Positions 21,254 through 64,000 of a DNA stretch of 64,000 nt are shown in pieces. The stretch lies in contig NC_086110.1 in the NCBI RefSeq assembly GCF_963921235.1, forward strand, positions 21,018,001-21,082,000, read 5' to 3'. The position numbers and the translations under genes were made by a program. The stretch is from Mobula hypostoma (Eukaryota). The notes under the pieces were generated by a model. The model was not told where the DNA came from, did no database searches, and was given only the letters and a program-made list of their open reading frames with translations. Numbering within the stretch: position 1 is the first letter of the stretch; every line of letters starts with the position of its first letter.

Positions 21254-22207
21254 TCGACTGGATTTATTAACTTCAACGTCACACTGACGCCATCACTGAA
21301 ATGGGATTTGGATCCACCTCCAGCAATGTTTCTTTAAAGTCACCTAATTTAGTTTCATGTTAGTCCTGACTGAGTGAATAGCATTCTCAGTCAGAAAGCT
21401 GTACATTTGAGTCCTACTGCAGAGATCTGAGCACAAAATCCAGCGTGCCACTTTAGTACAATGCTGAAGAGCAGTGAACTATTAGAAGTCTTTTCTTTCC
21501 ATAAGGCATTAATTCCATTTCAGGTCACAGGGCATTATCTGATGTGTTCTCCCAGGCTCCTGAGTTGACCCAAGTTGTCCATGCCAGACAAGAAATTCAT
21601 CTACACTTTGGCCAGCATGCTTTCATATACATCAACCTGTCTCTTCATTTTTTTGTGTGTGGGGGAGGGGGATTTGGAGGTCGATGTGCCTGTTCCATTT
21701 TTATTCATTTGCTTTGTGCGGGGAGGAGGGATTTGGGGTTTGATGCTCGTGCTGCTTTCTTGGTTTTGTGGCTATCGGGAGAAGAACGATTTCAGAGTTG
21801 TATACTTTGATAATAAATGAACCTTTGACTCTATGTCTCTAACAAGGAAGATAATCCAGACAATTTTATAGGCTGTAGTAGTCTGGGGCCACATGCAAGC
21901 TTAAAGGCATGTAAGGTCTTTCAAGGTAGAGGTGTTAAAACAGCATTCTCAGAACAAAAATCTGATATTATCTGAGCTCAGTATGAAAAGGGAAAGTGAT
22001 CTAACAGTGGATAGCATCACATTTATTCATGTTATGCTGCAGGAGTTTAGAAGCTGTAATAGGTAGCCTAGATGGAATAGAATCCCTGGATGTAGTGTTC
22101 TTGGATTTTTGGAAGTCCTTGATAAAGTCATGCTTAAGGGCATCCCGATGGGTGGCATGACAGTGCAGCAGACGGAGCTGCCTCATACCTCCAGCGACCC
22201 GGGATGG

Positions 22208-23305
22208 AACATAGAACATAGAATAGTACAGCACAGTACAGACCCTTCGGCCCACAACATTGTGCTGACCCTCAAACCCTGACTCCCATATAAGCCCCCA
22301 CCTTAAATTCCTCCATATACCTGTCTAGTAGTCTCTTAAACTTCACTAGTGTATCTGCCTCCACCACTGACTCAGGCAGTGCATTCCACGCACCAACCAC
22401 TCTCTGAGTAAAAAACCTTCCTCTAATATCCCCCTTGAACTTCTCACCCCTTACCTTAAAGCCATGTCCTCTTGTATTGAGCAGTGGTGCCCTGGGGAAG
22501 AGGCGCTGGCTATCCACTCTATCTATTCCTCTTATTATCTTGTATACCTCTATCATGTCTCCTCTCATCCTCCTTCTCTCCAAAGAGTAAAGCCCTAGCT
22601 CCCTTAATCTCTGATCATAATCCATACTCTCTAAACCAGGCAGCATCATGGTAAGTCTCCTCTGTACCCTTTCCAATGCTTCTACATCCTTCCTGTAGTG
22701 AGGTGACCAGAACAGGACACAGTACTCCAAGTGTGGCCTAACCAGAGTTTTATAGAGCTGCATCATTACATCGCGACTCTTAAACTCTATCCCTCAATTT
22801 ATGAAAGCTAACACCCCATAAGCTTTCTTAACTACCCTATCCACCTGTGAGGCAACTTTCAGGGATCTGTGGACATGTGTCCCGAGATCCCTCTGCTCCT
22901 CCACACTACCAAGTATCCTGCCATTTATTTTGTACTCTGCCTTGGAGTTTGTCCTTCCAAAGTGTACTACCTCATATTTCTCCAGGTTGAACTCCATCTG
23001 CCACTTCTCAGCCCACTTCTGCATCCTATCAAAGTCTCTCTACAATCTTTGACAATCCTCTACACTATCCACAACATCACCAACCTTTGTGTCGTCTGCA
23101 AACTTGCCAACCCACCCTTCTACCCCCACATCCAGGTCGTTAATAAAAATCACGAAAAGTAGAGGTCCCAGAACAGATCCTTGTGGGACACCACTAGTCA
23201 CAATCCTCCAGTCTGAATGTACTCTCTCCACCACCGCCTCCTGCCTTCTGCAGGCATGCCAATTCTGAATCCACCTGGCCAAACTTCCCTGGATCCCATG
23301 CCTTC
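22208..23305 (-). mobile_element. Young 5'-truncated CR1 LINE
   Basis: SGVPQGSVLGPLLFVIFINDLD, KFADDTK and LYKTLVRPHLEYC motifs; (TTCTAT)n tail. Confidence 0.92.
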
Positions 23306-23865
23306 TTGACCCAAGTTGCCCATGCCAGACAAGAAATTCATCTACACTCATCTACACTTTGGCCCTCATGCTTTCATACACATCAATCTGTCCAAGTGCT
23401 TCAAGAATGCTGGGATTGCATCCACTTCTACCTTCTTCTCCAGAGGCCTGACCACATATTCACAACCCTGTGTCAAAAACATTCTCCTCAGATCTCCTTT
23501 AAACCTTTCCCTCCCGCTTCAATCCACGCCCTGTAGTTTTAGAGTCCCCTACCTCTGGAAAAGTGCTGTGACCGTACCCAACCTCATCCCCTCATTCTTT
23601 TATTAACCCTTCAGATTCCTGCACTCCTGTGAGGACAATCCCAGCCTATCCAATCTTTCCTTATAACTAAAGACCTTCATTCCAGGGAACATCATGATGA
23701 ACATCTCCTTCCTTCTTTCTGGAGCTGTTGCAATATCTGATAATAATGAGTATCTATTGTTGATGAGGTAGGGGGTCATTCACATTCTTGTGTTGATTTA
23801 GCAAATGCTATCAATTTTAGTGCTCCCGCAGCTGATACTTTAGTTAGTAATAGTTTTAACAGTTT

Positions 23866-24855
23866 TAGAATCAGAATCAGAATCAGAATCAGCTTTATTA
23901 TCACTGGCATGTGTCGTGAAATTTGTTAACTTAGCAACAGCAGTTCAATGCAAAATATAATATAGAAGAGAATCAATCAATCAATCAATTACAATATATA
24001 TATTGAATAGATTAAAAATAATGCAAAAACAGAAATAATATATATATTTTAAAAAGTGAGGTAGTGTTCACAGGTTCAATGTCCATTTGGGAATTGGATG
24101 GCAGAGGGGAAGAAGCTGTTCCTAACTCGCTGAGTGTGTGCCTTCAGGCTTCTGTACCTCCTCCCTGATGGTAACAGTGAGAAAAGGGCATGCCCTGGGT
24201 GCTGGAGGTTAATAATGGATGCTGCCTTTCTGAGACACCGCTCCTTGAAGATGTCCTGGGTACTTTGCAGGCTAGTACCCAAGATGAAGCCGACTAAATC
24301 TACAACCCTCTGCAGCTTCTTTCAATCCTGTGCAGTAGCCTCCCCATACCAGACAGTGATGCAGCCGGTCAGAATGCTCTCCATGGTACATTTATAGAGG
24401 TTTTTAAGTGTTTTTGTTGATATACCAAATCTATTCAAACTCCTAATGAAGTATATTTTCTGTTTTGCCTTCTTTATAGCTGCATCGATATGTTGGGACC
24501 AGGTGGGGTCCTCAGAGATCTTGACACCCAGGAACTTGAAACTGCTCACTCTCTCCACTTCTGATCCATCTATGAGGATTGGTATGTGTTCCTACGTCTT
24601 ACCCTTCCTGAAGTCCACAATCAGCTCTTTCGTCTTACTGATGTTGAGTGCCAGGTTGTTCCTGCAGCACCACTCCACTGGTTGGCATATCTCGCTCCTG
24701 TACACCCTCTCATCTCCGTCTGAGATTCTACCAACAATGGTTGTATCATCAGCAAATTCATGGATGATATTTGAACTATGCCTAGCCACACAGTCACGTG
24801 TATATAGAGAGTAGAGCAGTGGACTACGTACACACCCCTGAGGTGCACCAGTGGG
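23866..24855 (-). mobile_element. Rex1/Babar-type LINE fragment
   Basis: EFADDTTIVGRIS, LNISKTKELIVDFRK, ERVSSFKFLGV, RNSFFPSAI; (ATTCTG)n tail. Confidence 0.88.
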
Positions 24856-25644
24856 GATAGAATATCTATCTCCCAGCTTTTATAGGACGTAGATGTTCCA
24901 ATTTGCTGGGATTGATAATGAAGGAATGACAGAGATATATCAATAATTACATTGACTCCATACCACTAGGCATTTAGATGATGTTATCAGGGATAATGAA
25001 GATAGGATTCAAACACTGGGGTTCAATAGTGTAGTGATCAGAACTGCACTCATTGTTCAAGTGCAGCCTCACCAACATCTTGTACATCTGCTTGTCCTCA
25101 TCTAGGTGTAGATGGGTTGATGGAAATTTGGACAAAATGGGTGATGGTAGGATTAGTGTGGTTAGGTGATGGAAACGTGATGTGGGGTGATCAGCCAGGC
25201 TTGATGAGTTGAAGAGCCTGTGCTGGATCTCTGTAACCATATGGAAATTCACTGCCTGGGCAACACGGAGTGGAAGCAAGATGCTGGACTTATCAAAGGC
25301 AGCATATTTGGAAATCAAACACTTTTTTTCTTAAAGATCTATAACTGACTGTAGATTACAGAATCATAGTGCACCACAGCACAGAGACAGGCTCTTCGGC
25401 CCATCTAGACCATGCCGAGCTAGTAGTTTACCTCGTCCCATTGACCTGCACCTGAACCAAAGCCATTCGTATTTCCACTATTCATGTACTTACCCAAATT
25501 TCTCTTGAATGCTGTTTGTTCCACACTCAGTCCCCTCTCTGAATGAAGAAATTCCCCCTCATTTCCCCTCCACTTCCACTGGCAGCTCATTACACACTCT
25601 CACCACTCTGTGTGAAAAAGTGTCCCCTTAAATATTTCACCTTT

Positions 25645-26205
25645 CATCCCGGTAGCCACCCACTTCAACTCTGCTTCCCACTCCCATTCAGATATGTCCA
25701 TACGTGGCCTCCTCTACTGCCATGATGAGGCTAAACACAGTTTGGAGGAACAACACCTCATATACCGTCTAGGTAGTCTCCAGCCCCTTGGTATGAACAT
25801 AGAATTCTCCAACTTCCGGTAATTCCCTCCCCCTCCCCCTCCATTCCCCATCCCTACGTCACTCTGCCCCCTCCCCCAGCTGCCTATCACCTCCCTCTTG
25901 GTTCCGCCTCCTTCTACTACCCATTGTGTTTTCCCCTATTCTTTCTTCACCTTTCCTGCCTATCACCTCCCTGCCTCCCTTACCCCACCCCTTTATCTTT
26001 CCCCTTACTGGTTTTTCACCTGGAACCTACCAGCCTTCTCCTTCCCACCCTCCCCCCACCTTCTTTATAGGGCCTCTGCCCCTTCCCCCTACAGTCCTGA
26101 CAAAGGGTTCCGGCCTGAAACGTCGACCGATCTTTTCCACAGATGCTGCCTCACCTGCTGAGTTCCTCCAGCGTGTTGTGAATGTTGTTTTGACCCCAGC
26201 ATCTG
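25645..26205 (+). mobile_element. Penelope-like element 3' fragment
   Basis: LEEQHLIYRLGSLQPLGMNIEFSNFR* followed by pyrimidine-rich pseudo-LTR. Confidence 0.75.
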
Positions 26206-26430
26206 AAGATTATTTTGTGTTCTGAGGGAGAAAAGCCTGCTTGCAATTAACCTATCTATACCTTTCATAATTTTGTACATCTCTAGCAAATCCCCCCACA
26301 TTCTCCTATGCTGCTAACTTATTCACCCTTTCCCTATAACTCATATATTACTTAGATTTATTAATAACTTATATTTCCAGACAGGCCTTAAAGAACAACA
26401 CAGGTTTAGAATTCATGTTGAAGAAGTACA

Positions 26431-26436
26431 TTTATT
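26431..26436 (-). terminator. PolyA signal of ctrb-B
   Basis: AATAAA 30 nt after TAA; same in copy C (53134-53139). Confidence 0.8.
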
Positions 26437-26466
26437 TTCATTTGCATTTCACATGTTGTTTTGCAC

Positions 26467-26628
26467 TTAGTTGTCAGCAATGGTGCTATCGATCCAGTCC
26501 CTGAGCTCCGTCACGCGGGCATAGACAGCAGGAGTGCTGGTGGAGCAATAGCCACTGCCCCAGGAAACGATGCCAACCAAGTTCCATACGTTGTGCTTCT
26601 GACAGACAAGTGGGCCGCCAGAGTCATC
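26467..26628 (-). CDS. ctrb: ctrb-B exon 7 (Ser195; G193D; Ala226)
   Basis: [53 protein letters not shown]. Confidence 0.93.
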
Positions 26629-29600
26629 CTGTAAACAAGTCACAGCCTCAGACTTGGTCAAATTTCCTTTTTGCAACTTAAAAGAGGTTGAAGTACTTTG
26701 AAAAGGTTTCATACCATGCCAGATGAGGCACCAGCTGCCCCAGCGCAGATCATGATATCGGTGACACTGCTACCCCAGTAGTTCCGGCAGTTCACGTTGG
26801 AGAGGAGAGGAAGAGCAGCTTGCTGAAGTTTGTTAGGTCGTTTAGCAGCTGTGGAAACGTTAGATGATACTTCAATCAATTTTGCTTTTTTTTTTAAGGG
26901 TCATACTCCAATGAAAGTAAAAGGGTATATTTTCAGCCATTAGAAACCTTTTATAGGCCTATTGATTGACTATACCTCTTTCCGGCCTGTCTCCCTTTTC
27001 TCAATTCTTGTGCTTCCACTGTATCTATTGCCAGGATAAGGCTTTTCTTTCCAGGACAGGGAGGAGGTGAACAGCGAGGTGTAGCATTTCTGTTGCATGC
27101 AGGGATATGTGAGAGAGACTAGTGGGGAGGGCTAAATGGACAAAGGAATCATGGAGAGAGCAATCCCTATGAAACGTGGATAGTGGGGGAGGGGGGGTAA
27201 AGATGTGTTTGGTGCTAGGATCCCACTGAAGATGTGGAGAGTGGAGGGAAGGTAACGATGTGTTGGCGGTAGGATCCCTTTGCAGACGGCGGAAGTTGTG
27301 GAGGATGATGCGTTGGGTGCAGTGGCTCATGAGGTGACAGGTCAGGACAAGAGGAACTCTATCCTTGTTCAGGTGGCAGGAAGATGGGGTGGACGTGGAT
27401 GTCCGGGAAATGGAGGAGATGCAGGTGAGGAAGAGAAACCCCGTTCTTTGTCCTTATCCCTGGGACAGATGCGACAGAGGTGAAGGAACTGAGCAAAGGG
27501 AATGGCGTTTTTACAGGAGATCGGGTGGAAATAGTATCGTCAAGATGGCCGTGGGAATCAGCAGGTTTATAAAAGATGTCAGTAGATAGTTGGTCTCCAG
27601 AGATGGAGACAGAGAGATCGAGAAAGGGGAGGGAGGTGTCAGAAACGGACCAAGTGAATTTAAAGGTAGGGTGGAAGTTGAAGGCAAAGTTTATGAAATT
27701 GATGAGCTCAGCATGTAGGTGTGAAGCAGCATCTATGCAGTTGTCAATGTAGTGCAGAAAGAGTTGGGGAGTTTGACCAGAGAAGGCTTGGAACATGGAC
27801 TGCTCTACGCAGCCAGTGAAAAGGTAGGCGTAGCTGGGGCCCATACAGGTACCCACGGCTACCCCTAGGGTTTGGAAAAAGTGAGAGGGACCAAAGGAGA
27901 AATTGTTAAGGGTGGGAACCAGTTCTGCTAGACAGGAAGGTATTGGTGGAGGGGAACTGGTTGGGTCCTTTGGAGGGAAAAATACAGAGAACTTTAAGGC
28001 CTTCTTGATGGGGGATAGAAAGTTATAGGGACTGGACATCCATGGTGAAAATGAGGCGGTCGGGGCAGGGAATTGAACATTATTGAGGAGATCGCGAGCA
28101 TGAGAAGTGTGGCTGTGTTGATCTGGGAAGGGACTGAACCAAGGGGAATATAATGGAGTTGAGGTATGTGGACATGAGTTCAGTGGGGCAGGAGTTGGCA
28201 GAGACAATGGTCTTACTCGTACAGTCACGTTTGTGGATCTTGGGTAGAAGGTAGAAACAAGCATTGCGGGTTAAGGAAACTATAAGTTTGGTGGCAGTGA
28301 ATGGGAGTTCACAAAGTTGATGAGATCAGTGATGGTGACACTGACGGTCCAGAATATGGTCCTTTTCAAGGAGGTGTCTTGAGAGTTTCCGACTGGCATC
28401 AGCAAGGTCGAGGTCAGTCCGCCACACAGCAATAGCTCCCCCTTTGACTGCAGGTTTGCTGGTAAGGTTGTGATTGGTGTGGAGAGAGTGGAGGGCAGTG
28501 CATTCAGAGGGAGTAAGACTGGAGGAGGAGGAGAGGAGTGCTGAAATTGAGGCAGTTGATATTTCGTTGGGAATTAGAGATGAAAAGATCTGGAGCTGGC
28601 AGAGAACCAGAGCGGGATGTCCAAGAGAAGGTGTAGGATTGGATATGGGAGGAGGGGTCATTGGTGCAGTGGACTGAGGGCCCGACAATGGAGGGGGCAA
28701 AACTCGTCCTACATTTGGGAAGGTGACAGTGAGGGAGCACTTAGGGACCAGTGACTATATTTCTAATAGTTTTTAAAGGGTTATGGAAAGGGACAGAACT
28801 GGTCCACAGGTTCAAGTTCTAAGCTGGGGCAAGGATAATTTTAACAGTATGAGACAGGAGGTTGCAACGATTGTTTGGGGTAGGTAGTTTGTTGACACAG
28901 AGCCCACAGGTAAGTGGGAGTCTTTTAAAAGTGATCTAGTAAGATCTCAAAGCCTACATGTTCCTGTTGGAGCGTAGGGCAAGGCAGGCAGGAGTACGGA
29001 ACCTTGGACAATGAGGGATATTGAGGCCCTGACCCTGGAGAAAACGAGGCATAGGTTAGGTACAAGCAGCTGGGATCAAGCAATTCTCTGGAGGGATATA
29101 GGGTTAAACAGGGGGAATGAGGGATTTTTGACAGAGAATATGAATAAAATTCTACACAGATTGTATGTATATTAACATAGAAACAGAATAAGGCCCCTCA
29201 AAGATCACAAGAACATATCTTTGTGTGGAGCCACAGGAGGCAGGCATGGTCCTTAATGAATATCTCTCCTCTGTTATTTTTTAACCACAGAGAGTTGTAT
29301 GAATGGCAGGGCACTGGGGAGTGGTGTAGAACAGAGTGAAAGTCACAGGTAGGTGAAGAGGTGAAGAAGGCTTTTGACACACTGGCCTTTGTCTCTCAGG
29401 CCAATGAGTAGAGAAGTTGGGAAGTCATGTCATTTTGTGGTTGTATTGGACGCTGGTAATACTGCTCTTGGAATATTGTATTCATTTTTGGTCGCCTTGC
29501 TGCAGTAAAGGTGTTGTTAGACTGGAAGAGGTGTAAAAAAGATTTATAAGGATGCTGCCAGGATTTGAATAAATGAATTATAGGGAGAGGTTGAAGAGGC

Positions 29601-46208: not shown

Positions 46209-46532
46209 GTAAGCCTTAACGCCTACAAAGAGAGAAAGAAATGTGCTGGTGAATCATTCTCTAATTCCTGAGGGATGATGCAGCTTTAACTGATATTTTT
46301 GTTCAAAGTTATATATGAGGCAAAGAAAAGTTGCTCTTGTGGGCATGAACATTGACCTAATGAGGGAAGATCCTTGCATGAATAGTTTGGGAAATCGTTG
46401 ACTGGAAAGTACAATTTTCCCTCAACCCCCAGCCACCCCCCCTCCCCCCACCACTGATGAATCTTGGAGTTGCTGGTATCTTGCAACAAGCAAACTCTGT
46501 CACTGCTTTTGTTTTTCTTTTGTCACATACAG

Positions 46533-46614
46533 TACGAACGACTTTGCTATTGTTGGTGCCTATGACAAAAGCTCAAAAGCTGAAGCCAGCCAGAAATCCA
46601 TGTCCATTGCTAAG
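46533..46614 (+). pseudogene. ctrb: ctrb-C exon 4
   Basis: [27 protein letters not shown]. Confidence 0.85.
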
Positions 46615-47962: not shown

Positions 47963-48143
47963 GTCATTACACACCCCAAGTGGAACCCATCCACCATTAA
48001 TTATGATGTTTCTGTGGTGAAGCTTGCAACCCCCGTTCAGTTCAACAGTCATGTGTCGCCAGTCTGTCTCGCCGCTGTATCTGATAACTACCCAGAGGGC
48101 ATGATGTGTGTCACAACGGGATGGGGAAGGACTCGTGCTTATC
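47963..48143 (+). pseudogene. ctrb: ctrb-C exon 5
   Basis: [21 protein letters not shown]...GWGRTRAY. Confidence 0.9.
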
Positions 48144-48369
48144 GTATGTCAGTTCAAAACTTTACAAATTACAGTGTTGCAGTTCCGAGCTCTGTGCCTT
48201 TATACCCTTACCCTGACAGGGAGCAGTGGATAGATTCCCAAGATGATTGGCAATCTGGAAGGTTATGCTATGAATAATACTTCATGGCTGCAACAAGTTT
48301 CTCTGGTCAAGGAACAGGATAATTCTGTTCATCAGAGGGATATTGTGGGCTTCTACAACTGATCCAGTG

Positions 48370-50750: not shown

Positions 50751-52721
50751 TTCCTCAGTCTCGGTCGAGTTTTGCCCTCTCCATTGTCGGGCCCTCAGTA
50801 TACTGTCCAAGGTAACTTCCTTGAAATCACCTTAAGCCCTTAACTGTATGTATGTTCCTCAGTATTTTAGGAAAGTTTAAATCTCCTTCAAGAATACTCC
50901 TAGTATTCTTGCATCTCTCGACAATCTCCCTGCATGTTTATTCCTCTACTTCCCGTTCAAAATTGGGAGGCCTATAGTACAATCCCAACATTATTTCTCG
51001 GCTCCACCCACAAAGCCTCATTGGACATGAACCACAAACCTGATGCAGTCTGTCCATTCCAGAGTCATTTGTCGGGTACTCGACTTGAACATCAGCAAAG
51101 GCAAATTTTCAAAGAAACAGCAACTTAGAGGTATATGGTCATCAATCAATTTGTGCTGACATTGGAAAACATAGTTTTCAACAGATTGTGGAAAGAATTC
51201 CTGAGTTAGCTTCTTGCTTTATTTGTTTTAACGTAATATTATTGCATCATAGGATAACTTCACTCACCTCAACTCTGAACTGATACCACAACCTACACAC
51301 TCACTTTCATGGACACTGAAATCATATATTCTGTATTTATTTATTTGTTTATTTATTTTTGCACAGGTTGTTTTCCTATGAACAGTGGCTATTTGTATTT
51401 GTTAACGTAGCTTTTTCATAAATTCTATTGTACTTGTAAGTGCCCGCAAGAAAAATGAATCTCAATTTGGCACACGATGACATAGACATACACACTTTCA
51501 TGATAAATTTACTGACACGCTGACTTTACTTTTAATCAGACTGAATCAGTTATATGGAGGAGAGGAGCAAATCCTAGGGGCCTAGATAGAGTGCCGTGGA
51601 CAGGATGTTTCCTAGAGTGGAGGAGTCTAAGAGCAGAGGGCTCAGGCTTACAATAGAAGAATGCTCCTTTAGAACAGGGATGAGGAGGAAATTCTCTCCA
51701 ACCCCAGTCCTCTCAGGATCCCCCGTCACTTTTTGGGTCCTAAGAGCCACCATCTTCTTCCCACCTAACCTTCCCAGAACACCCTAACCCTCCACCAACT
51801 CCCCAACTCTTTCTGCACTACATTGACAACTGCATAGATGCTGCTTCACACCTTCATGCTGAGCTCATCAATTTCATAAACTTTGCCTTCAACTTCCACC
51901 CTACCCTTAAATTCACTTGGTCCATTTCTGACACCTCCCTCCCCTTTCTCGATCTCTCTGTCTCCATCTCTGGAGACCAACTATCTACTGACAACTTTTA
52001 TAAACCTGCTGATTCCTACGGTTATCTTGACGATACTATTTCCACACGATATCCTGTAAAAACACCATTCCCTTTGCTCAGTTCCTTCACCTCTGTCGAG
52101 TCTGTCCTAGGGATAAGGACAAAGAACGGGGTTTCTCTTCCTCACCTGCATCTCCTCCATTTCCCGGACATCCACGTCCACCCCATCTTCCTGCCACCTG
52201 AACAAGGATAGAGTTCCTCTTGTCCTGACCTGTCACCTCATGAGCCACTGCACCCAACGCATCATCCTCCACAACTTCCGCCGTCTGCAAAGGGATCCAA
52301 CCGCCAACACATCGTTACCTTCCCTCCACTCTCCACATCTTCAGTGGGATCCTAGCACCAAACACATCTTTACCCCCCTCCCCCACTATCCATGTTACAT
52401 AGGGATTGCTCCCTCCATGATTCCTTTGTCCATTCAGCCCTCCCCACTAGTCTCTCTCACATATCCCTGCATGCAACAGAAATGCTACACCTCGCTGTTC
52501 ACCTCCTCCCTGTCCTGGAAAGAAAAGCCTTATCCTGGCAATAGATACAGTGGAAGCACAAGAATTGAGAAAAGGGAGACAGGCCGGAAAGAGGTATAGT
52601 CAATCAGTAGGTTTATAAAAGGTTTCTAATGGCTGAAAATATACCCTTTTACTTTCATTGGAATATGACCCTTAAAAAAATAAAGCAAAACTGATTGAAG
52701 TATCATCTAACATTTCCACAG

Positions 52722-52855
52722 CTGCTAAACGACCTAACAAACTTCAGCAAGCTGCTCTTCCTCTCCTCTCCAACGTGAACTGCAGGAACTACTGGGGTAG
52801 CAGTGTCACCGATGTCATGATCTGCGCTGGTGCTGCTGGTGCCTCGTCTTGCATG
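52722..52855 (+). pseudogene. ctrb: ctrb-C exon 6
   Basis: [44 protein letters not shown]. Confidence 0.9.
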
Positions 52856-52941
52856 GTATGAAACCTTTTCAAAGTACTTCAACCTCTTTTAAGTTGCAAA
52901 AAGGCAATGAGACCAAGTCTGAGGCTGTGACTTGTTTACAG

Positions 52942-53103
52942 GGTGACTCTGGCGGCCCACTTGTCTGTCAGAAGCACAACGTCTGGAACTTGGTTGGCAT
53001 CGTTTCCTGGGGCAGTGGCTATTGCTCCACCAGCACTCCTGGTGTCTATGCCCGCGTGACGGAGCTCAGGGACTGGATCGATAGCACCATTGCTGACAAC
53101 TAA
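52942..53103 (+). pseudogene. ctrb: ctrb-C exon 7 (Gly226)
   Basis: [53 protein letters not shown]. Confidence 0.9.
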
Positions 53104-53441
53104 GTGCAAAACAACATACGAAATGCAAATGAAAATAAATGTACTTCTTCAACATGAATTCTAAACCTGTGCTGTTCTTTAAGGCCTGTCTGGAAATATA
53201 AGTTATTAATAAATCTAAGTAATATATGAGTTATAGGGAAAGGGTGAATAAGTTAGCAGCATAGGAGAATGTGGGGGGATTTGCTGGAGATGTACAAAAT
53301 TATGAAAGGTATAGATAGGTTAAATGCAAGCAGGTTTTTCTCCCTCAGAACACAAAATAATCTTCAGATGCTGGGGTCAAAACAACACTCACAACACGCT
53401 GGAGGAACTCAGCAGGTTGAAAACCGGTAATGCCAAACCCA

Positions 53442-56400
53442 TGAGATAATCAATCTCAGGTCCTAAATTTGTACCGGACTGAGATTCTAGAAGCAGCTTC
53501 CGCAAACAGAAGTATATTTCAGCAACATGAGTGCCCTCTAGGTCATCGCTATCAACTAAGGATGAACAATATTTAAATTTTTAATTGGTGATATATTGCA
53601 GAATTGAAATTACATTTCTTTCCTGTTTATGTAAGTAGACATGGTTAAAGTTTCTGTTCAAAGTGCAAAGAAAGACACTCCTGTGTAATACATTTGTATT
53701 CTACAAAATGTAACAGAGTCCTCCACCTCCCCCAACATAACTGGTAGCAAATTTAAGGAATTTTGTAATTGCACTTTAACCGTATGGTAAAAATTGAGCT
53801 TTAAATTAGACAAATAAATCACCAAATTCTCTCTGTCATTAGAAATTTTGGGGCATTTGTGACAAATTACTGGTAGATCCATTATTTCCTATCACAAGAG
53901 GGGTTTAAGAAAAGTTTGGACAGGTACATGAATAAGAGGGGTATGGAGGGCTATGGTTTAGGGACCTGGCAGAAGACCAGTTTGGTATGGAGTAGATGGG
54001 CTGAAGGGCCTATTTCTGGGCTGTAGTGCTCTATGACTCTCTCACACTAAATTAAGAGCTGAGCTGGGCTGCACTCCACTGCAAGTTTCTCCTTCTCATC
54101 AAAGTAAAACGTTTATTTCAACTGCAAACTTACAAGTTGCACATGGAAAGCAACATAACATAATATAAAGCTGTTTACGTCTAAAACAGAGAAGTTGTCA
54201 AGAGGACAAGTACAAAGCTAGTTCTTGACCAGGTCACAGTCACTACCGATTTTCCTGCAGTAACAAATAGCAGTAAAGAATCTGCAGTAACAAATGGCGC
54301 ATAAATCACAGCAAGGCAGAGCATGGCCAAAGCAGGACTCTAGGTGTCGAACGCATCTCCTGGGCGAACGCTCTGATCTATCCGTCTCGACTGCATCAAA
54401 CATCAGCTGTAAGAGAAAATGTTAAAGTTTACAGAATATGAAATGTCACATACCATTTTCAATTTCTCCAATTTTGCAACAAGAACAACGAGTCGCATTT
54501 AACATTTAAACATGGACTACCGACTATATACCCTGTGGGCCAAATGGTCTCCTCGTTCTTTAAGGAGATATAATGCCGTAAACCTGGAACTATGTAAACC
54601 AGCATTGCCTCTTCCTTATATAAGTCAGGGAGCGGTTAAACCAACCTGGGCTAGCCCGGGTAAGGAGGGTGTCTTGGCATTCAGCAGAGCTAAGCCTGTC
54701 AATAGGCAGATGTCTCCAGGTTACTCTGCTTTAAGAAACACAAGGCAACAGAAATGTCCTCATAACAGATTAGTTGAGGCTGAAAAATGCAGGTCTTGTT
54801 GGTGCTGGAGAGGACAGAACATCGTTGCAGAAACACCTAAGGTACCCCAATATCAGAGTGACGTTGGGATTAAAAATTGTGTGAGAATATTTCCTCATTC
54901 ATAATTTTCTTTTATTTTAACTAAGAAACAATTTTATATTAAATAAATACAATTCATATTAAAGAATCCTAAATATTAAATAGCAGATGATTGTGTAATG
55001 TTGGGCCAGAACAGTGAATAACAGAATTTAATTGAACTGCTGATGTTTCAGCTTTAAATCGTATTATATTTTACAATATCTGTTATAAAAAGTCAAATTT
55101 GAAAAGTAATTAAAACTTAATCAGTTTACCAGATATCAGTCACTCTGCCTTTGGAACGATAATATATAAAAACTGGATTTACCTCAGGATTGAGCATAAT
55201 CTTTTCTGCCATTTGATGTTCTTTTTCCAATGTGGGTTTAGTCAGTGGACTTGAATTCACAACATTAACAGAATTCGTCAAATGTCTATCCTGTTGTTCA
55301 TGCAAACATTAAATGTCAGTGCATGAAATGGTGACTTGGTAGATGGCAATAATAATGACCTAAAATAAAGGCTGCCGCACAAACCATTCTCTACCTTTCT
55401 CAATGGATTTGTGCTCTACCACATTAACATTCCCCAGAAGTCTGGAGAAGAACCAAAAGAATTCAAACAAACAAAACTGACAGAGTGAACTGTAAGAACA
55501 AAGAATAAGAGACAATAGAAAGGCACTCAATCTCCAACAGACTCTCAACCATACAGGAGACTCACTCAATGATAAAGTGAGGTTTAAGAGTAAATTATTT
55601 CTAAAGGTGACAGAGCACAACAAAAGTATGTTCTGGGTGTAATGTCAGGGATATCCAAAATGAGTTCTACATTGCTAATTAGAGACTACTCTAACAAACT
55701 GCCTATGTACATTGAATGAGAGTATTGGCTTCACTGTAAACAAGAGCTGATCACTTATTTTTCTTCCAGTGAAATATATTTTTGTAGGTTTCCTATGCGG
55801 AACCTGTACCATGCTCTCCCAGTAGAGTCATAAATCCATTCAATACTCTTGGACAAAATGCAACAGTCAACTGCGACTGAAGCAGTAGATAATTAGTCAC
55901 GCTGAGAGCCAAAGACCAGGATTAATGCAGAGAGTGCAGAATTAAATGGAGATGGTTAATACTCACCTGCAGCAGAAAATAGGGTCTTGCCCCTGCTCAG
56001 GGATGTAAAGTCGGCATTTGTGGTCACATCTCTAACGGCGTTGGAATCCAGTTCAGCTCTGATGGCACCGAAGCAGAGAATGAGCTGTAGAGCACAGCAG
56101 TAGAGCAGCATGGCATTAACCATGATACCTGCAGGATAATGGCACAACACTCAGCAGGGTAGCAACACCCCACCACAAGAAAAATAATCTGTTTCTATTA
56201 ATACACTGGGCAACAACCCTACTTTCTCTATCATCAGCGTATAACGCATCTGCTGAAGTTGGATCTCAGAAATCACTTTGATTTAATAATCTCCATTTAC
56301 CTGCAAGGAACAGCTCATGAAGTGAAAGTGAACTTTTTCTTTCCCCAGTCGGTGGTTGCTGAGAGCTGCTATCTGTTTTTGAACTCCTGTGTTCACACTT

Positions 56401-56521
56401 CCTGGTTTATATCGACTGGATTTACTAACTTCAACGTCACTCTGACACCATCACTGAAATGGGATTTGGATCCACCTTTAGCAATGTTTCTTTAAAGTCA
56501 CCTAATTTAGTTTCATGTTAG
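53442..56521 (+). repeat. Direct duplicate of 18275-21363 (whole agrp transcription unit)
   Basis: Collinear high identity; both junctions carry about 24-bp fillers unrelated to the immediate flanks. Confidence 0.93.
54218..56123 (-). pseudogene. agrp: Agouti-related protein copy 2: reading frames open but middle-exon acceptor AG>AA; probable pseudogene
   Basis: Exons 55967-56123, 55183-55250, 54218-54406; knot CVRHLESCFGHALPCCDLCAICYCRFFTAICYCRKIGSDC; base 55251 destroys the CAG acceptor. Confidence 0.75.
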
Positions 56522-56544
56522 GGAATGACGTAAACAGCTTTATA

Positions 56545-57980
56545 TCAGGTTTATAAAAGTTGTCAGTAGATAGTTGGTCTCCAGAGATGGAGACAGAGAG
56601 ATCGAGAAAGGGTAGGGAGGTGTCAGAAATGGACCAAGTGAATTTAAGGGTAGGGTGGAAGTTGAAAGCAAAGTTTATGAAATTGATGAGCTCAGCATGA
56701 AGGTGTGAAGCAGCATCTATGCAGTTGTCAATGTAGTGCAGAAAGAGTTGGGGAGTTTGACCAGAGAAGGCTTGGAACATGGACTGCTCTACGCAGCCAA
56801 TGAAAAGGTAGGCGTAGCTGGGGCCCATATAGGTACCCACGGCTACCCCTAGAGTTTGGAAAAAGTGAGAGGGACCAAAGGAGAAATTGTTAAGGGTGGG
56901 GACCAGTTCTGCCAGACAGGAGGGTATTGATGGAGGGGAACAAGTAGGGTCTTTTGGAGGGAAAAATACAGAGAACTTTAAGGCCTTCTTGATGGGGGAT
57001 AGAAATGTATAGGGACTGGACATCCATGGTGAAAATGAGATGGTCAGGGCAGGGAATTGAACATTATTGAGGAGATCAAGAGCATGAGAAGTGTTGCTGT
57101 GTTGATCTGGGAAGGGACTGAACCAAGGGGGATATAATGGAGTTGAGGTATGTGGACATGAGTTCAGTGGGGCAGGAGCTGGCAGAGACAATGGTCTTAT
57201 TCAGACAGTCACGTTTGTGGATCTTGGGTAGAAGGTAGAAACAAGCAGTGTGAGATAAGGGAACTATGAGTTTGGTGGCAGTGAATGGAAGGTCACAAAG
57301 TTGATGAGATCAGTGATGGCAACACTGAGGCTCCAGAATATTGTCCTTTTCAAGGAGGTGTCTTGAGAGTTTCTGACTGGCATCAGCAAGGTCGAGGTCA
57401 GTCTGCCACACAGCAATAGCACCCTCTTTGACTGCAGGTTTGCTGGTAAGGTTGTGACTGGTGTGGAGAGCGTGGAGGGCAGTACATTCAGAGGGAGTAA
57501 GGCTGGAGGAGGAGGAGAGGAGTGCTGAAATTGTGGCGGTTGATGTTTCGTTGGGAATTAGAGGTGAAAGATCTGGAGCTGGCAGAGAACTAAAGCCGGA
57601 TGTCCAAGAGAAGGTGTGGGATTGGATATGGGAGAAGGGTCATTGGTGCAGGGTGGGGGAATCTTGCCAAAGAACTGGGCTTGGAGACGGAGGCGACAAA
57701 AGAGGACTTCAGCAACCTGCCAGGCATAGAACTCACTCTGATGCAGGCAAAGGAGGACAAACATGAGACCTTTGCTGAGGACGGAACATTCCACCTCAGA
57801 GAGGGGAAGGATGGAGAGAATGGGGAAGACATGGCAAGGATTCGAGCTGGGATTGGAAGGGGGAGGAGAGCAGGGTGAGGGTTAGGGTGTTCTGGGAAGG
57901 TAGGGTGGGAAGAAGATGGTGGCTCTGAGGACCCAAAAAGTGACGGGGGATCTTGAGAGACCTGGGGTCGGAGAGAATTT
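56545..57980 (-). mobile_element. Penelope-like RT fragment (ctrb-D intron 5)
   Basis: ORF 56502-57191 is homologous to 27359-28264. Confidence 0.85.
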
Positions 57981-58244
57981 CCTCCTCATCCCTGTTCTAA
58001 AGGAGCATTCTTCTATTGTAAGACTGAGCCCTCTGCTCTTAGACTCCTCCACTCTAGGAAACATCCTGTCCACGGCACTCCATCTAGGCCCCTTGGATTT
58101 GCTCCTCTCCTCCATATAACTGATTCAGTCTGATTAAAAGTAAAGTCAAAATGCCAGTAAATTTATCATGAAAGTGCGTACATATATGTTATGGTGTGCC
58201 GAATTGAGGTTCATTTTGATTGCAGGCATTTACAAGAACAATAG

Positions 58245-60510
58245 AAGTACGGAACCTTGGATAACGAGGGATATTGAGGCCCTGACCCTGGAGAAAAGGA
58301 GGCATGGGTTAGGTACAAGCAGCTGGGATCAAGCAAATCTCTGGAGGGATATTGGACAGACAGGGGGCGTGAGGGAACTTTGACAGAGAATATTAACAAA
58401 GTTCTACAGAGATTGTATAAGTATATTAACGTAGAAACAGAATAAGGCCCCTCAAAGATCACAGAGACATATCTTTGTGTGGAGCCACAGGAGGCAGGCA
58501 AAGTTCTTAATGAATATCTCTCCTCTGTTTTTTTTTACCATTGAGAGTTGCATGAAACCTTAACAACTAGGAAATTTAAATGGAGTTGTCTTGGGGATAG
58601 TCTGCATTGCAGTAGAAGGGTGCTGTATGTCTTAAAAGGTAGGAAGGTAGACAAATCAACAGGTTTGACCAAGTGTATCAAAGAATACTATGGGAAACTA
58701 GAGAAGAAATTGTGGGAGCCTTGTCTCAGATATTTGCATCATCGTTAGCCACAACTGAGGAGACAGTAGGCAGGAGAGTAGCAAATGTTGTGCCTTTATT
58801 TAAGAAGGGGGCAAAGAAAAACCTGGGAACTATAAAGCAGTAGGTCTAACATCTGTCAGTTACTAGAAAGGATTCTGAGAGACAAAATATATGTCAATCT
58901 GGAAAGTCAGGGACTGATTAGGTCAGTATGGTTTTGTGCATGGGAGATCATGTCTTACGAACTTGATTGAGTATGTGTCATAGAAAGTCTATGAGGGGAG
59001 GGTGGTAGATCTAGTTTATATGGAATTCAGTGAGGCCTTTGATAAGGTTCCACATGGTAGGCTGCTCCAGAAGGTGAGATTACATAGAATGCAGAGAGAG
59101 CTGGCTAATTGGATACATGATTGTCTTGATGGTAGAAAGCAAAGGGTGATGGTAGAAGGTTGCTTATTGGACTAGAAACACATGACAAATGGTGTGCCCC
59201 AGGGGCTGTGCTCAGCCCATTGTTTATCAATGATTTGGATAATAATCTGCAAGGCACGGTTAATAAGTCTGCATTCAACATTAAAGCAAATGGTATAGTG
59301 GACAATGGAAAAGGGTTATCAAAAATTACAGGCAGATCTTGATCAACTGGGTAAATGGGGCAAAGGGTGGAAAAATGGGTTGAATTCAGATAAATATGAA
59401 GTGCTATATTTTGGAAAGTCAAATCCAGGTAGGATTTTCACAGTGAATGGCAGGGCACTGGGGAGTGGTGTAGAACAGAGTGAAAGTCACAGGTAGACGA
59501 GGAGGTGAAGAAGGCTTTGGCACACTGGCCTTTATCTCTCAGGCCAATGAGTAGAGAAGTTGGGAAATCATATCATGTTGTGGTTGTACTGGACGCTGGT
59601 AAGACTGCTCTTGGAATATTGTATTCATTTTTGGTCGCCTTGCTGTAGTAAAGGTGTTGTTAGACTGGAAGAGGTGTAAAAAAGATTTATAAGGATGCTG
59701 CCAGGATTTGAATAAATGAATTATAGGGAGAGGTTGAAGAGGGTAGGACTTTATTCCTTAGAGCATTAAGGACTGAAGATGATCTTATAGAGAGGTATAA
59801 AATCATGAGTGGCAAAGATAGGGTGAATGTATTCCGTCTTTTTCCCCCAGAGTTGGGACATCAAGACCAAGAGGGCATAGGTTTAAGGTGTGAGTGGAAA
59901 GATTTCAGAGAAACTTGAGGGACAACCTTTTTCATTCCACAAAGGGTGGTATCTATGCAGAATCAGCTACTGGAAGAAGTGGTAAGGCAAATATAATGAC
60001 AACTTTTAAAAGACATGTTGGACAGGTACATGGATTGGAAAGGATTAGAAAGTTATGACACATGGATTAAAGAGGTTTTGAAGGTTATGGGACCATGGAT
60101 TGGAAAGGCTTAGAAGCTTATGGGTCTGTGGATTGGAAAGGTTTAGAAGGATATGGGTCCATGGATTGGAAATGTTTAGAAGGATATGGGTCTATGGATT
60201 GGAAAGGTGTAGAAGTTTATGGGTCTGTGGATTGGAAAGGTTATAAAGTTATTGTTCTATGAATTAGAAAGGTTTAGAAGGTTATGGGTCTATGGATTGG
60301 AAAGGTTAGGTTATGGGTCCATGGATTGGAAAGAGTTAGATTATGGGTCTATGGTTTTGAAAGGTTTAGAAGGTTATGGGTCTGTGGATTGGAAAGGTTT
60401 AGAACGTTATGGTCCAAACATTGGCAAATGGCACTAGATTGGATGGGGTACCTTAGTCTGCTTGGACCAATTGGGCAGAAGGACCCACTTCCAATCTATA
60501 TGACACTGTG
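58245..60510 (+). mobile_element. Degenerate CR1 LINE (ctrb-D intron 5) with expanded 33-bp tandem array near its 3' end
   Basis: Homologous to 48370-50480; array at about 60030-60415. Confidence 0.8.
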
Positions 60511-60746
60511 AACACCTTATCGCTGGATCAGTTGTAGAAGCCCACGATATCCCTCTGATGAACAGAATTATCCTGTTCCTTGACCAGAGAAACTTGTTGC
60601 AGCCATGAAGTATTATTCATAGCATAACCTTCCAGATTGCCAATCATCTTGGGAATCTATCCACTGCTCCCTGTCAGGGTAAGGGTACAAAGGCACAGAG
60701 CTCGGAACTGCAACACTGTAATTTGTAAAGTTTTGAACTGACATAC

Positions 60747-62750
60747 GATAAGCACGAGTCCTTCCCCATCCCGTTGTGACACACATCATGCCCTCTGGGT
60801 AGTTATCAGATACAGCGGCGAGACAGACTGGTGACACATGACTGTTGAACTGAACGGGGGTTGCAAGCTTCACCACAGAAACATCATAATTAACGGTGGA
60901 TGGGTTCCACTTGGGGTGTGTAATGACCTGTAACAGAGAGAACATGGATGACGGCTGTGCCTAGTACTCATCTTTTACAGTTGGCACTTGCTTGAGACCG
61001 ATAACTTCAGACTCTCCTGGATTTCATGTCAATGGAGCTGCACTCATGAATGGGGAATTGCTTATTCAAAATAGAATTCAAAAGCCCTTCATTAGAAAAC
61101 AAAGTCAGCAATTTAAAGAGAAATAGATAGACTTACAAGCTGGAAGTGGAAATAAGTGGCTGCATTCTGTGGTTTACCATCACACTGGTGCTGTCGTCTT
61201 GTATAAAACATCTTCAGTTTTTCCTTTCTGAATATGATTAATATTTTTGGGATAATTAGTTTTTTTTCAGTTGCCTAGACACTTCGATCAAGCCAGCAGT
61301 TCATGTGCTCATTTCTAAACTCTATATGAGCAAAACAGCAATCACCTCAGCACAATAGACAACAATTTCTCATTGCATCTACATCTGTCTCAAATGCTAA
61401 TGAACTTCTTGCAAACCACTCGACACCAGGACACAACGATGGTCAGAAGACAAAAAGAAGATGCAAACATCATTCAGAAGTATCAGCAATCAATCCCAAA
61501 TCATTGACTCAAAATGGTTCAGCTTTGCAAAGAATTAAGCAATCGTTGGTAATCTGTTGATACACCAACCTTATCTAGGACAAGGAGACAAAGGGCAAAT
61601 CATGTAGAGAAAAGGGTGCCAGTCCAGCTACCAGGACAGAGAGGTTCAAACATTACCGTGTGTGCAGTCATATAGACACTGGCATTCAGGCATACAGCCC
61701 AAAGACTGGACCTTATACCGACCCACACATTATCAAATTCCCTGATGGGCTTTACAGGCAACCCTTAGTGAACAGGACACCAGGATCAATGGCCACTCTA
61801 TGCCATGCATTCCAACATGAAATGTCTAATCTGTTTGCTTCATGTTTGTACTTATGACTGAGTTTGTCTTTTCACTTACTACACTGCAAGTAACATTTAT
61901 TGCTGGAAGGCCCATGTGTCAGGGTATTGGGGCTAGTGCAGAGGAAAATTAATCTGATTGAAACTGGGGCCCCAACGCCTGAGGGAAGTGATATGTAACA
62001 ATCTTTTATCATCTTCAGCAGCACCTGAAATAATTCTTGCTTTTGCTTGTTATCGATATCTAGTGATTCTATTCTTGGTGCTATGAAGTTTATCATGGAG
62101 AGGCATATTCATATTGGAGATTGAAACCACTTTCGGTGTTGGACACCCCTTACTAAGATCCTGTGTCCTGTCTGTACGGCATCCATCTCTGCACATCATT
62201 TTGGATCCTAACAGTACTGTAGCCCAAATTTGACCTGAATTCAAACAAATTCCTAGTTTTACAGGGAGATACATACCTTAGCAATGGACATGGATTTCTG
62301 GCTGGCTTCAGCTTTTGAGCTTTTGTCATGGGCACCAACAATAGCAAAGTCGTTCGTACTGTATGTGACAAAAGAAAAACAAAAGCAGTGACAGAGTTTG
62401 CTTGTTGCAAGATACCAGCAACTCCAAGCTTCATCAGTGGTGGGGGGGGGGGGTGGAGGGAAAATTGTACTTTCCAGTCAACGATTTCCCAAACTATTCA
62501 TGCAAGGATCTTCCCTCGTTAGGTCAATGTTCATGCCCACAAGAGCAATTTTTCTTTGCCTCATATATCACTTTGAACAAAAATATCAGTTAAAGCTGCA
62601 TCATCCCTCAGGAATTAGAGAATGATTCACCAGCACATTTCTTTCTCTCTTTGTAGGTGTTAAGGCTTACCTCACTTCACAATGTGCAGCGGTGACAACC
62701 CAGTTTTCATTGATCAACTAACCACCGCAGAAATGCCAACCAGAGTCACT
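60747..62750 (-). pseudogene. ctrb: Chymotrypsinogen B-like copy D: exons 3-5 only in window, nonsense codon, exons 6-7 deleted
   Basis: Exons 62671-62750 (HFCGG*LIN, TAG at 62718-62720), 62277-62358, 60747-60927; intron 5 runs into agrp-2 near 56545. Confidence 0.9.
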
Positions 62751-63271: not shown

Positions 63272-64000
63272 GGAGTTCTGCCTGCAGCTCAACGGAGTAA
63301 CGTGTAAAGTCTGTGGCTGCCTTTAATTCCTCCTTTTCCCCAATTTAATTCTTGAATTATTCAACTTATATTTTCTGTATCTTGGAAGGAAATAGTGGTT
63401 ATTATGTCGTATCCTTTAAGAAGTGGAAAACAGCCTTCTAAACCCAGCAATGGAAAGGGAAAAACTTCAAAAGAAAAATCAGAAGACATGCCTGTCTGGG
63501 CTGAGCGTTTGGAACGTGCGTTGATGGATCTCGATAACAAAGTGGTTAATAACACTTCTGAATTGAAGTCGTTCCGACAGAGTGTACAGACTATTGAGGA
63601 AAATATTCTTTCCCTGAATACTGAGCTTAAAGAATCGAAATGTCAGATTGCGGATATTTCAACCCGATTGGAACAGACTCAACGCAAAATTGTCCATTTA
63701 GAGGCAAAGTCTTGAAGAAACAACATTCGTATTTTAGGTCTTTCGGAAGGCTCAGAATTTGAGGATCTATTGGATTATTTTGCCAATCTGTTTCACTCTC
63801 TGCTCCCAGATATTCTGTCTCAGCCGCCCGATATTGAAAGAGCTCACAGAATTTTCACTGCGTCAGGTAAAGCTCGACCAATTTTAGTCAACTTTCTTCG
63901 CTTTAAAGTTAAAGACCAAATTATAAAATGTGCAAGAAAACAGAAAGTTTTTAAATTTAACGGTTCCGAGATCCGTTTTTATGAAGATTATCCACGGGAA
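63272..64000 (+). mobile_element. LINE-1 5' end and ORF1 (one nonsense codon), inserted in ctrb-D intron 2
   Basis: ATG 63404, coiled coil, LEAKS*RNNIRILGLSEG, IERAHR, RPILVNF, FNGSEIRFYEDYP (L1 ORF1p motifs); homology to the other copies stops at 63271. Confidence 0.85.

What the first reader, a model, noticed from the sequence alone, without database searches (positions are those of the whole stretch)
54112..62750. Deletion joins a chymotrypsinogen gene to AgRP: ctrb-D exon 5 is in frame with the agrp-2 first coding exon
Seen: relative to the agrp-1/ctrb-B unit, about 6.2 kb (equivalent to 21364-27561) is missing here. That removed ctrb exons 6-7, the ctrb polyA site and most agrp upstream DNA. 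The ctrb-D exon-5 donor (...GCT TAT C|gt, 60747) now has, as the next recognisable exon acceptor on the same strand, cag|GTATCATG of agrp-2 (56128). Joining gives CGT ATC ATG GTT (R-I-M-V), in frame, across a 4618-nt intron close to the normal intron 5 length (4578 nt in copy C). Inference: a pancreatic zymogen promoter could drive a ctrb-AgRP chimeric transcript, linking digestive-enzyme expression to a melanocortin-receptor antagonist. Caveat: this haplotype has a TAG in ctrb-D exon 3 and a broken agrp-2 acceptor, so it is more likely a decayed or non-coding chimera today.
Basis: partly seen in the sequence, partly recalled or inferred. Interest (0 to 1): 0.8.

Follow-up and report, generated by a model that had tools for sequence, protein, structure and literature searches.

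The report
Broken chymotrypsinogen copy abutting duplicated AgRP
In a ray's cluster of duplicated digestive-enzyme genes, a 6.2 kb loss has left a truncated, stop-containing chymotrypsinogen copy just upstream of a damaged second copy of the appetite gene AgRP; the in-frame fusion is possible on paper, but the only RNA available is non-pancreatic and shows ordinary AgRP messages, so this looks like duplication debris.

Summary
Compared with the agrp-1/ctrb-B unit, 6,198 bp (21364-27561) are missing between agrp-2 and ctrb-D. That interval holds ctrb exons 6-7, the poly(A) signal and LINE debris. The junction carries a 24-nt filler, and 19 nt of it are an inverted copy of the agrp-2 3'UTR. The ctrb-D exon 5 donor (60747) and the agrp-2 first coding exon acceptor (56128) are intact, lie 4,618 nt apart and join in frame.

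The chimera itself has no support. ctrb-D has a TAG in exon 3, lacks the Ser195 exon, and its similarity to the other copies stops at an L1-like insert (63272), so no promoter is visible. agrp-2 keeps its own TATA box and non-coding first exon. Its next acceptor is AG>AA, it has Pro>Leu in the CCDPC knot motif, and it shows 8 non-synonymous against 2 synonymous changes.

RNA contigs from two runs show only the normal four-exon AgRP message, mostly with agrp-1 letters. Those runs contain no chymotrypsinogen words, so pancreas remains untested. An in-frame join has a one-in-three chance.

Most likely this is a pair of pseudogenes in a decaying segmental-duplication array. Three of the four ctrb copies in the window are defective. 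Interest is low.

The parts
62671..62750 (-). ctrb-D exon 3 (His57 exon, TAAHC), with an in-frame TAG at 62718-62720 where copies A, B and C have TCC (Ser)
62277..62358 (-). ctrb-D exon 4, with intact splice sites
60747..60927 (-). ctrb-D exon 5 (Asp102 exon). The donor TATC|gtatgt is intact. Pfam Trypsin E=6.2e-15; best solved-structure match is chymotrypsinogen B (2jet_B, E=2.3e-16)
56546..60746 (-). Remaining 5' part of ctrb-D intron 5. It holds a reverse-transcriptase-like retroelement fragment cut at the breakpoint (56546-~58200, sense strand), a LINE RT fragment (58557-59443, antisense, shared with copy C and absent from B) and a minisatellite (60028-60412)
56522..56545 (.). 24-nt junction filler. 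Positions 56527-56545 (19 nt) are an exact inverted copy of the agrp-2 3'UTR at 54163-54181
56371..56521 (-). Retained agrp-2 5' flank of about 150 bp, with the TATA-like GATATAAAC at 56405-56413
   Evidence: (sequence)
56301..56370 (-). agrp-2 non-coding first exon (x1nc), donor CAG|gtaaat. An RNA contig maps to this exon and is joined to c1
   Evidence: X17 record 15
55967..56128 (-). agrp-2 first coding exon (c1: 5-nt leader plus ATG, signal peptide), 162/162 identical to agrp-1. This is the acceptor proposed for the chimera
55183..55251 (-). agrp-2 second coding exon (c2, 55183-55250) with the mutated acceptor AG>AA at 55251. Using the AG one base downstream, or skipping the exon, both give early stops
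54218..54406 (-). agrp-2 last coding exon (c3): agouti cystine-knot domain (Pfam PF05039, 53.3 bits) with CCDPC>CCDLC (54303-54304). It has 10 nt differences from agrp-1
54112..54117 (-). agrp-2 AATAAA poly(A) signal. RNA contigs of the expressed copy end near 54104
53418..53441 (.). Second 24-nt filler, between the inverted tail of ctrb-C (ends at 53417 inside a highly repeated element) and the start of the agrp-2 segment (53442)
63272..64000 (+). L1-like ORF1 fragment (coiled coil, then RNNIRILGLSEGSE after a stop), antisense in ctrb-D intron 2. Similarity of D to copies A, B and C stops here
   Evidence: no significant Pfam domain match
21364..27561 (-). Reference interval in the agrp-1/ctrb-B unit that is missing in unit 2: the rest of intron 5, ctrb exons 6-7, the poly(A) signal and LINE-rich intergenic DNA

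Best explanation
This is inert debris of a segmental-duplication array, not a working fusion gene. An [AgRP + chymotrypsinogen B] unit was duplicated, giving agrp-1/ctrb-B and agrp-2/ctrb-D. ctrb-C is an inverted sister copy of D, placed tail to tail with agrp-2 in the spacer. A 6.2 kb loss, sealed with a templated 24-nt filler, then removed D's exons 6-7 and poly(A) site. This left a 5' gene fragment (exons 3-5 in the window) pointing at agrp-2. Both partners are pseudogenes on this haplotype. ctrb-D has a premature TAG and no Ser195 exon. agrp-2 has a dead splice acceptor, a Pro>Leu change in the cystine knot and an excess of amino-acid changes. agrp-2 still has its own core promoter and first exon. 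If ctrb-D is transcribed at all, exon 5 could splice to the agrp-2 first coding exon, but the message would stop at the exon 3 TAG and be a target for nonsense-mediated decay. Shown: the structure, the lesions, the frame and the normal AgRP mRNA architecture. Inferred: the order of events, the repair mechanism and the lack of function.
For: The missing interval and its exact edges come. The templated inverted filler, a mark of a real repair or replication event rather than a misassembly, comes. The TAG, the missing exons 6-7 and the intact exon 5 donor come. The agrp-2 AG>AA acceptor, the 8:2 non-synonymous to synonymous ratio and early stops under either alternative splice come. The C at 55251 (intact AG) is shared by agrp-1, a second DNA sample and a related organism, so the lesion is derived. 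RNA contigs X15#10 and X17#15 show x1nc-c1-c2-c3, differ from agrp-2 at 9/203 (c3) and 4/66 (c2) positions, and carry no ctrb exon. Contigs specific to copies B, C and D all occur at similar depth in DNA sample X1, so the paralogues are real. C and D are sisters: AB|CD has 10 informative sites against 4 and 3, and C-D is 97.9% against B-D 94.8%. The array is decaying generally: B has C191G and G193D beside the catalytic serine, and C has a broken exon 2.
Against: No pancreas or gut RNA could be examined, since the RNA runs hold none of the sampled ctrb exon 5 words, so a chimeric transcript cannot be excluded. ctrb-D exons 1-2 and promoter may exist beyond 64000. The exon 5 donor and c1 acceptor are both intact, and only one other strong acceptor-like site lies between them (58287), so splicing is mechanistically plausible. 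Whether the TAG and the acceptor lesion are fixed in the species is unknown. No listed DNA contig bridges 56521/56546.
Confidence: 0.75

Rival explanations
1. One reading: ctrb-D is transcribed from a pancreatic zymogen promoter beyond the window, and exon 5 splices to agrp-2 c1, giving a ctrb-AgRP chimeric RNA. On this haplotype the RNA would be non-coding or degraded. On haplotypes without the lesions it would encode a secreted fusion precursor, from which the AgRP knot could be released at the RSPRR site.
For: The exon 5 donor and c1 acceptor are intact, the join is in frame and there is no stop in the 5-nt leader. The first 4.2 kb of the interval is ordinary ctrb intron 5, which is presumably transcribed through in working copies. 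There is precedent at the sister gene ASIP, where deletions or duplications create RALY-ASIP and ITCH-ASIP fusion genes that are transcribed (PMC6466734).
Against: There is a TAG in exon 3. No D promoter or exons 1-2 are seen, and an L1-like element sits in intron 2. No chimeric contig appears in the available RNA. agrp-2 is itself damaged. Unlike the RALY or ITCH fusions, the upstream partner would contribute five coding exons of a protease lacking its catalytic serine, plus an internal signal peptide. The in-frame property is a 1/3 chance.
Confidence: 0.12
2. There was no secondary deletion. The ctrb-D/agrp-2 junction was made during the duplication itself, by serial template switching (fold-back or MMBIR-type), so D never had exons 6-7.
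For: Both edges of the 3.09 kb agrp-2 segment carry 24-nt fillers. One filler is a 19-nt inverted copy from 2.3 kb away, in the same inverted sense in which C relates to D. The B-C-D layout (direct, inverted, direct) resembles duplication/inverted-triplication products.
Against: Divergence levels differ: C-D is 97-98%, but B-D is about 95% and agrp-1/agrp-2 is 96%. That fits separate steps better than one event. Templated fillers also arise in end-joining repair of simple deletions. The 212-bp block next to the breakpoint is not specially similar between C and D once B is included.
Confidence: 0.25
3. Assembly artefact: the junction or the second unit is a misjoin or a haplotype duplication.
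For: No listed contig bridges 56521/56546. AgRP-body contigs in the DNA runs are a mosaic of agrp-1 and agrp-2 letters at twice the depth of ctrb-specific contigs, which is unexplained.
Against: The window has no N gaps. The copies differ by about 4%, far above allelic levels. D-specific contigs identical to the window, and B- and C-specific contigs, coexist at equal depth in sample X1. The agrp-2-specific letter at 56425 is present at depth 23. A templated inverted filler is a biological signature.
Confidence: 0.05

Closest known systems
RALY-ASIP (mouse lethal yellow, quail yellow) and ITCH-ASIP (sheep white, quail fawn-2) fusion genes
   Same: A deletion or duplication places the coding exons of an agouti-family gene downstream of another gene on the same strand, so the upstream gene's donor can splice to the first coding exon (PMC6466734).
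   Different: In those cases the upstream partner contributes only non-coding exons, a normal ASIP protein is made, fusion transcripts are demonstrated and there is a phenotype. Here the partner would contribute protease coding exons 1-5, both partners carry disabling lesions, AgRP's own promoter exon is retained and no fusion transcript is seen.
Chymotrypsinogen B (CTRB1/CTRB2-type) gene clusters with inverted duplicates
   Same: Seven-exon S1 protease genes in direct and inverted copies. Exon 5 of D matches chymotrypsinogen B best. From my own knowledge, the human CTRB1-CTRB2 pair is also an inverted duplication with a known inversion polymorphism, and a chymotrypsin-like gene lies on the same chromosome arm as AGRP.
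   Different: This is a ray-specific array of at least four copies. Three are defective in the window, and an AgRP copy sits inside the array.
Unprocessed pseudogenes and gene fragments left by segmental duplication and deletion, with templated-insertion junctions
   Same: D is a truncated 5' gene fragment with a premature stop. The duplicate agrp-2 has a splice lesion and relaxed constraint. The junction has a filler copied from nearby sequence.
   Different: Nothing essential differs. The only unusual point is the accidental in-frame geometry between two unrelated secreted-protein genes.

Membership tests
Chymotrypsinogen B / S1 serine protease gene (ctrb-D) | Trypsin-fold domain sequence | tested here: met
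   Exon 5 matches Pfam PF00089 at E=6.2e-15. The best solved-structure hits are chymotrypsinogen B and chymotrypsin.
Chymotrypsinogen B / S1 serine protease gene (ctrb-D) | Complete catalytic triad His57, Asp102, Ser195 | tested here: not met
   TAAHC (exon 3) and NYD (exon 5) are present. The exon 7 GDSGGP is absent, because exons 6-7 are missing from D.
Chymotrypsinogen B / S1 serine protease gene (ctrb-D) | Open reading frame and a complete seven-exon gene with promoter | tested here: not met
   TAG at 62720-62718. Exons 1-2 and the promoter are not in the window, and similarity to the other copies ends at the L1-like insert at 63272.
AgRP / agouti family (agrp-2) | C-terminal agouti cystine-knot domain with 10 Cys and the RFF triplet | tested here: met
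   Pfam PF05039 at 53.3 bits against a cut-off of 27. It aligns to human AgRP 1HYK at E=1.5e-13 with all Cys and RFF kept, but CCDPC is CCDLC.
AgRP / agouti family (agrp-2) | Spliceable gene giving the full prepropeptide | tested here: not met
   The acceptor of coding exon 2 is AA, not AG (55251). Both alternative splice outcomes end in early stops.
AgRP / agouti family (agrp-2) | Expression of this copy | tested here: inconclusive
   RNA contigs have the AgRP exon structure but carry mostly agrp-1-type letters in c2 and c3. Only the single diagnostic site in x1nc (56340) fits agrp-2.
Promoter-capture fusion gene at an agouti-family locus (RALY-ASIP type) | Structural juxtaposition on one strand, with an upstream donor facing the first coding exon acceptor | tested here: met
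Promoter-capture fusion gene at an agouti-family locus (RALY-ASIP type) | Fusion transcript detectable | tested here: inconclusive
   There is no e5/c1 joint in two RNA runs, but those runs hold none of the sampled ctrb exon 5 words, so the relevant tissue was not sampled.
Promoter-capture fusion gene at an agouti-family locus (RALY-ASIP type) | Product is an intact agouti-family protein | tested here: not met
   The upstream partner contributes coding exons with a TAG, and agrp-2 has a splice lesion.

The most novel reading that the evidence does not exclude
In other haplotypes or sister species, the same junction exists with an open ctrb-D frame and an intact agrp-2 acceptor. Pancreatic acinar cells would then secrete a chymotrypsinogen(1-5)-AgRP precursor, from which a convertase releases an active melanocortin antagonist, giving a gut-derived appetite signal in rays. 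The evidence does not exclude this. The acceptor lesion is derived, the donor and acceptor are intact, and pancreas RNA was unavailable.
Probability: 0.03. Interest if true: 0.8.

Novelty: new member of a known kind. Interest (0 to 1): 0.2.

Why it matters
If a zymogen promoter really drove AgRP, it would be a natural promoter capture like lethal yellow, but at the appetite-regulating paralogue, linking digestion to melanocortin signalling. The evidence points instead to an ordinary by-product of segmental duplication: two disabled gene copies that happen to line up in frame. The remaining value is descriptive. It gives a ray-specific AgRP duplication inside a decaying chymotrypsinogen array, an RNA-confirmed four-exon AgRP gene model, and a clean templated-insertion breakpoint.

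Tried and rejected
1. The first sequencing-run run failed because the machine was busy; it was repeated successfully.
The retroelement cut by the breakpoint (56505-57191 and 27362-28264) and the L1-like ORF1 gave no significant Pfam domain. They are called RT-like and L1-like from motifs read in the sequence only.
3. I suspected the 212-bp block next to the breakpoint (99% C-D) marked a recent template switch. This was rejected: B-C is 98.1% and B-D 97.2%, so the block is simply conserved.
4. I considered that DNA sample X1 and organism B lack the acceptor lesion. This was not claimed, because Logan contigs drop minor branches and the AgRP-body contigs are a mosaic. Only the polarity is claimed: AG is ancestral.
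5. Full-length AgRP or chymotrypsinogen homologue searches, and a search for an annotated chimeric protein, were not run. Spliced proteins have no reference form, and I did not type long sequences.
6. A paper on AgRP evolution (PMC3397983) has no mention of chymotrypsin neighbours.
7. Other scan notes added nothing on ctrb-D exons 1-2.
Full report
**Layout of the window.** Other notes of this scan say the genome is a ray. The window holds four chymotrypsinogen B-like copies and two AgRP copies in nested duplications.
- ctrb-A is on the minus strand, with exons 1-4 at 4938-1579; the rest lies off the window.
- agrp-1 is on the minus strand at 21212-19057.
- ctrb-B is on the minus strand, with seven exons at 35419-26467.
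- ctrb-C is on the plus strand at 42964-53103.
- agrp-2 is on the minus strand at 56370-54218.
- ctrb-D is on the minus strand, with exons 3-5 at 62750-60747.

Exon 5 of D is a Trypsin-domain piece (Pfam E=6.2e-15). Its best solved relatives are chymotrypsinogen B and chymotrypsin. The last exons of both AgRP copies match the Agouti domain (53-54 bits) and human AgRP (1HYK, E=1.5e-13).

Segment 18275-21363 equals 53442-56521 (96.05%), and 27562-28669 equals 56546-57651 (94.4%). So 21364-27561 (6,198 bp) is absent from unit 2. In unit 1 that interval contains the following:
- the 3' part of a reverse-transcriptase-like retroelement in intron 5;
- ctrb exon 6 (26848-26715) and exon 7 (26628-26467);
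- an AATAAA;
- about 5 kb of LINE-rich intergenic DNA, ending about 150 bp upstream of the AgRP TATA box.

The D exon 5 donor (TATC|gtatgt) and the agrp-2 first coding exon acceptor (ctgcag|GTATCATG) are intact and 4,618 nt apart. The join reads ...[16 protein letters not shown]..., in frame. The TAG in D exon 3 (62720-62718, TCC in the other copies) and the AG>AA acceptor of agrp-2 coding exon 2 (55251) are both present.

**The junction.** The 24 nt between the two matching blocks (56522-56545) are not random. Positions 56527-56545 are an exact inverted copy of 19 nt of the agrp-2 3'UTR (54163-54181). They match agrp-2's version, not agrp-1's. Templated fillers of this kind are left by polymerase-theta end joining or by replicative template switching. 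That argues for a real rearrangement rather than a misassembly. The other edge of the 3.09 kb agrp-2 segment (53418-53441) also has a 24-nt filler, of unknown source. It abuts the inverted tail of ctrb-C, which ends inside a very highly repeated element.

**Order of events (inferred).**
- Informative sites group A with B and C with D: 10 sites, against 4 and 3 for the alternatives.
- In the intron 4 to exon 5 region, C-D is 97.9% while B-D is 94.8%.
- C and D share an ~890 bp LINE fragment that B lacks.
- agrp-1 and agrp-2 differ by about 4%, like B and D.

A coherent history has three steps. First, the [AgRP + ctrb] unit was duplicated. Second, D was inverted-duplicated to give C, with agrp-2 in the spacer. 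Third, 6.2 kb were lost. The alternative, that the junction arose during one complex template-switching event, is not excluded; I give it about 0.25. The 212-bp block at the breakpoint, 99% identical between C and D, is not diagnostic, because B is 97-98% identical there too.

**State of the partners.** D lacks the Ser195 exon, has a premature stop, and its similarity to A, B and C stops at 63271. There an L1-like ORF1 fragment begins on the other strand. Exons 1-2 and the promoter, if they exist, are beyond the window.

agrp-2 keeps about 150 bp of 5' flank with its TATA-like box (56405-56413) and its non-coding first exon (56370-56301). Its first coding exon is identical to agrp-1's. The next acceptor is dead, and using the AG one base on, or skipping the exon, both give early stops. 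The coding differences are 8 non-synonymous against 2 synonymous. They include Pro>Leu in CCDPC, which human AgRP and agrp-1 keep. The array as a whole is decaying. B has Gly for Cys191 and Asp for Gly193 beside the catalytic serine, and C's exon 2 is interrupted after 68 nt.

**Sequencing runs.** Twenty-four runs in all were listed across the two searches. Four runs were laid on 53380-59300.

Two runs labelled 'RNA?' gave spliced contigs (X15 record 10, X17 record 15), so they do contain spliced RNA. The contigs join 56298-56365, 55965-56125/56133, 55183-55248 and 54204/54274-54406. Allowing for 2-3 nt of alignment ambiguity, these are the predicted x1nc, c1, c2 and c3 exons. Nothing is attached upstream of x1nc. 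These contigs differ from agrp-2 at 9 of 203 positions in c3 and 4 of 66 in c2, and the three c3 differences that are listed are agrp-1 states. They therefore confirm the gene model but do not show agrp-2 expression. The same runs contain none of the sampled words of ctrb exon 5, so they are not pancreas, and the chimera is untested where it matters.

In DNA sample X1, contigs identical to D, and contigs carrying C-specific and B-specific letters, all occur at depth of about 15-28. This supports three distinct loci. At 55251, agrp-1, X1 and a related organism (X5) all read C, so the acceptor lesion is derived. No listed contig bridges 56521/56546.

**Unexplained.** AgRP-body contigs in X1 and X5 have about twice the depth of ctrb-specific contigs. 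They are a mosaic of agrp-1 and agrp-2 states without private changes. A third AgRP copy outside the window, contig bubble-popping or gene conversion could each cause this.

**Comparison with known cases.** The nearest analogues are the RALY-ASIP and ITCH-ASIP fusion genes at the sister locus (PMC6466734). In those a deletion or duplication lets a foreign promoter drive an agouti-family gene. They use non-coding upstream exons, make a normal protein and are demonstrably transcribed. Here five protease coding exons would be fused, both partners are broken, and AgRP's own promoter exon is still in place.

**Verdict.** The functional reading is unsupported and, on this haplotype, cannot yield a protein. 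In-frame geometry is a one-in-three accident. The locus is best described as a truncated chymotrypsinogen pseudogene next to a disabled AgRP duplicate.

Noticed in passing
window 26467-26848 (ctrb-B exons 6-7): ctrb-B has an intact 266-aa reading frame but reads SSGM|DDSGGP where copy C has SSCM|GDSGGP. Cys191 is Gly (losing the 191-220 disulfide partner) and the oxyanion-hole Gly193 is Asp. IVNG is also IVSG at the activation N-terminus. It is probably an inactive protease or a young pseudogene.
   Followed up: partly
window 43124-43233 (ctrb-C exon 2): Exon 2 of copy C matches the other copies for only 68 of 110 nt and then runs into foreign sequence. Another note of the scan calls this a Tc1 insertion chimera. 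C is therefore defective too, although its exons 3-7 look intact (GDSGGP kept).
   Followed up: partly
window 35424-42754: ctrb-B and ctrb-C lie head to head. Their 5' regions form inverted arms (35424-37092 against 42754-41084, 97%) around a 4 kb spacer, which is itself an inverted copy of the region upstream of ctrb-A (6936-10796). B, C and D thus form a direct, inverted, direct series.
   Followed up: partly
window 53380-56477 in runs X1 and X5: DNA contigs over the AgRP body have about twice the depth of ctrb-specific contigs. They are a mosaic of agrp-1 and agrp-2 letters, and the RNA contigs share this type plus extra differences in c2. A third, expressed AgRP copy outside the window is possible.
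   Followed up: partly
window 60028-60412: Minisatellite of about 33-35 bp units (...ccataaccttctaaacctttccaatccatagac...) in ctrb intron 5. It is also present in copies B and C.
   Followed up: no
window 53380-53417 and 26090-26230: The tail of ctrb-C ends inside a very abundant repeat (GCTGGAGGAACTCAGCAGGT...; depth above 150,000 in DNA contigs and above 14,000 in RNA contigs). The left duplication breakpoint therefore lies in a high-copy, transcribed element.
   Followed up: no
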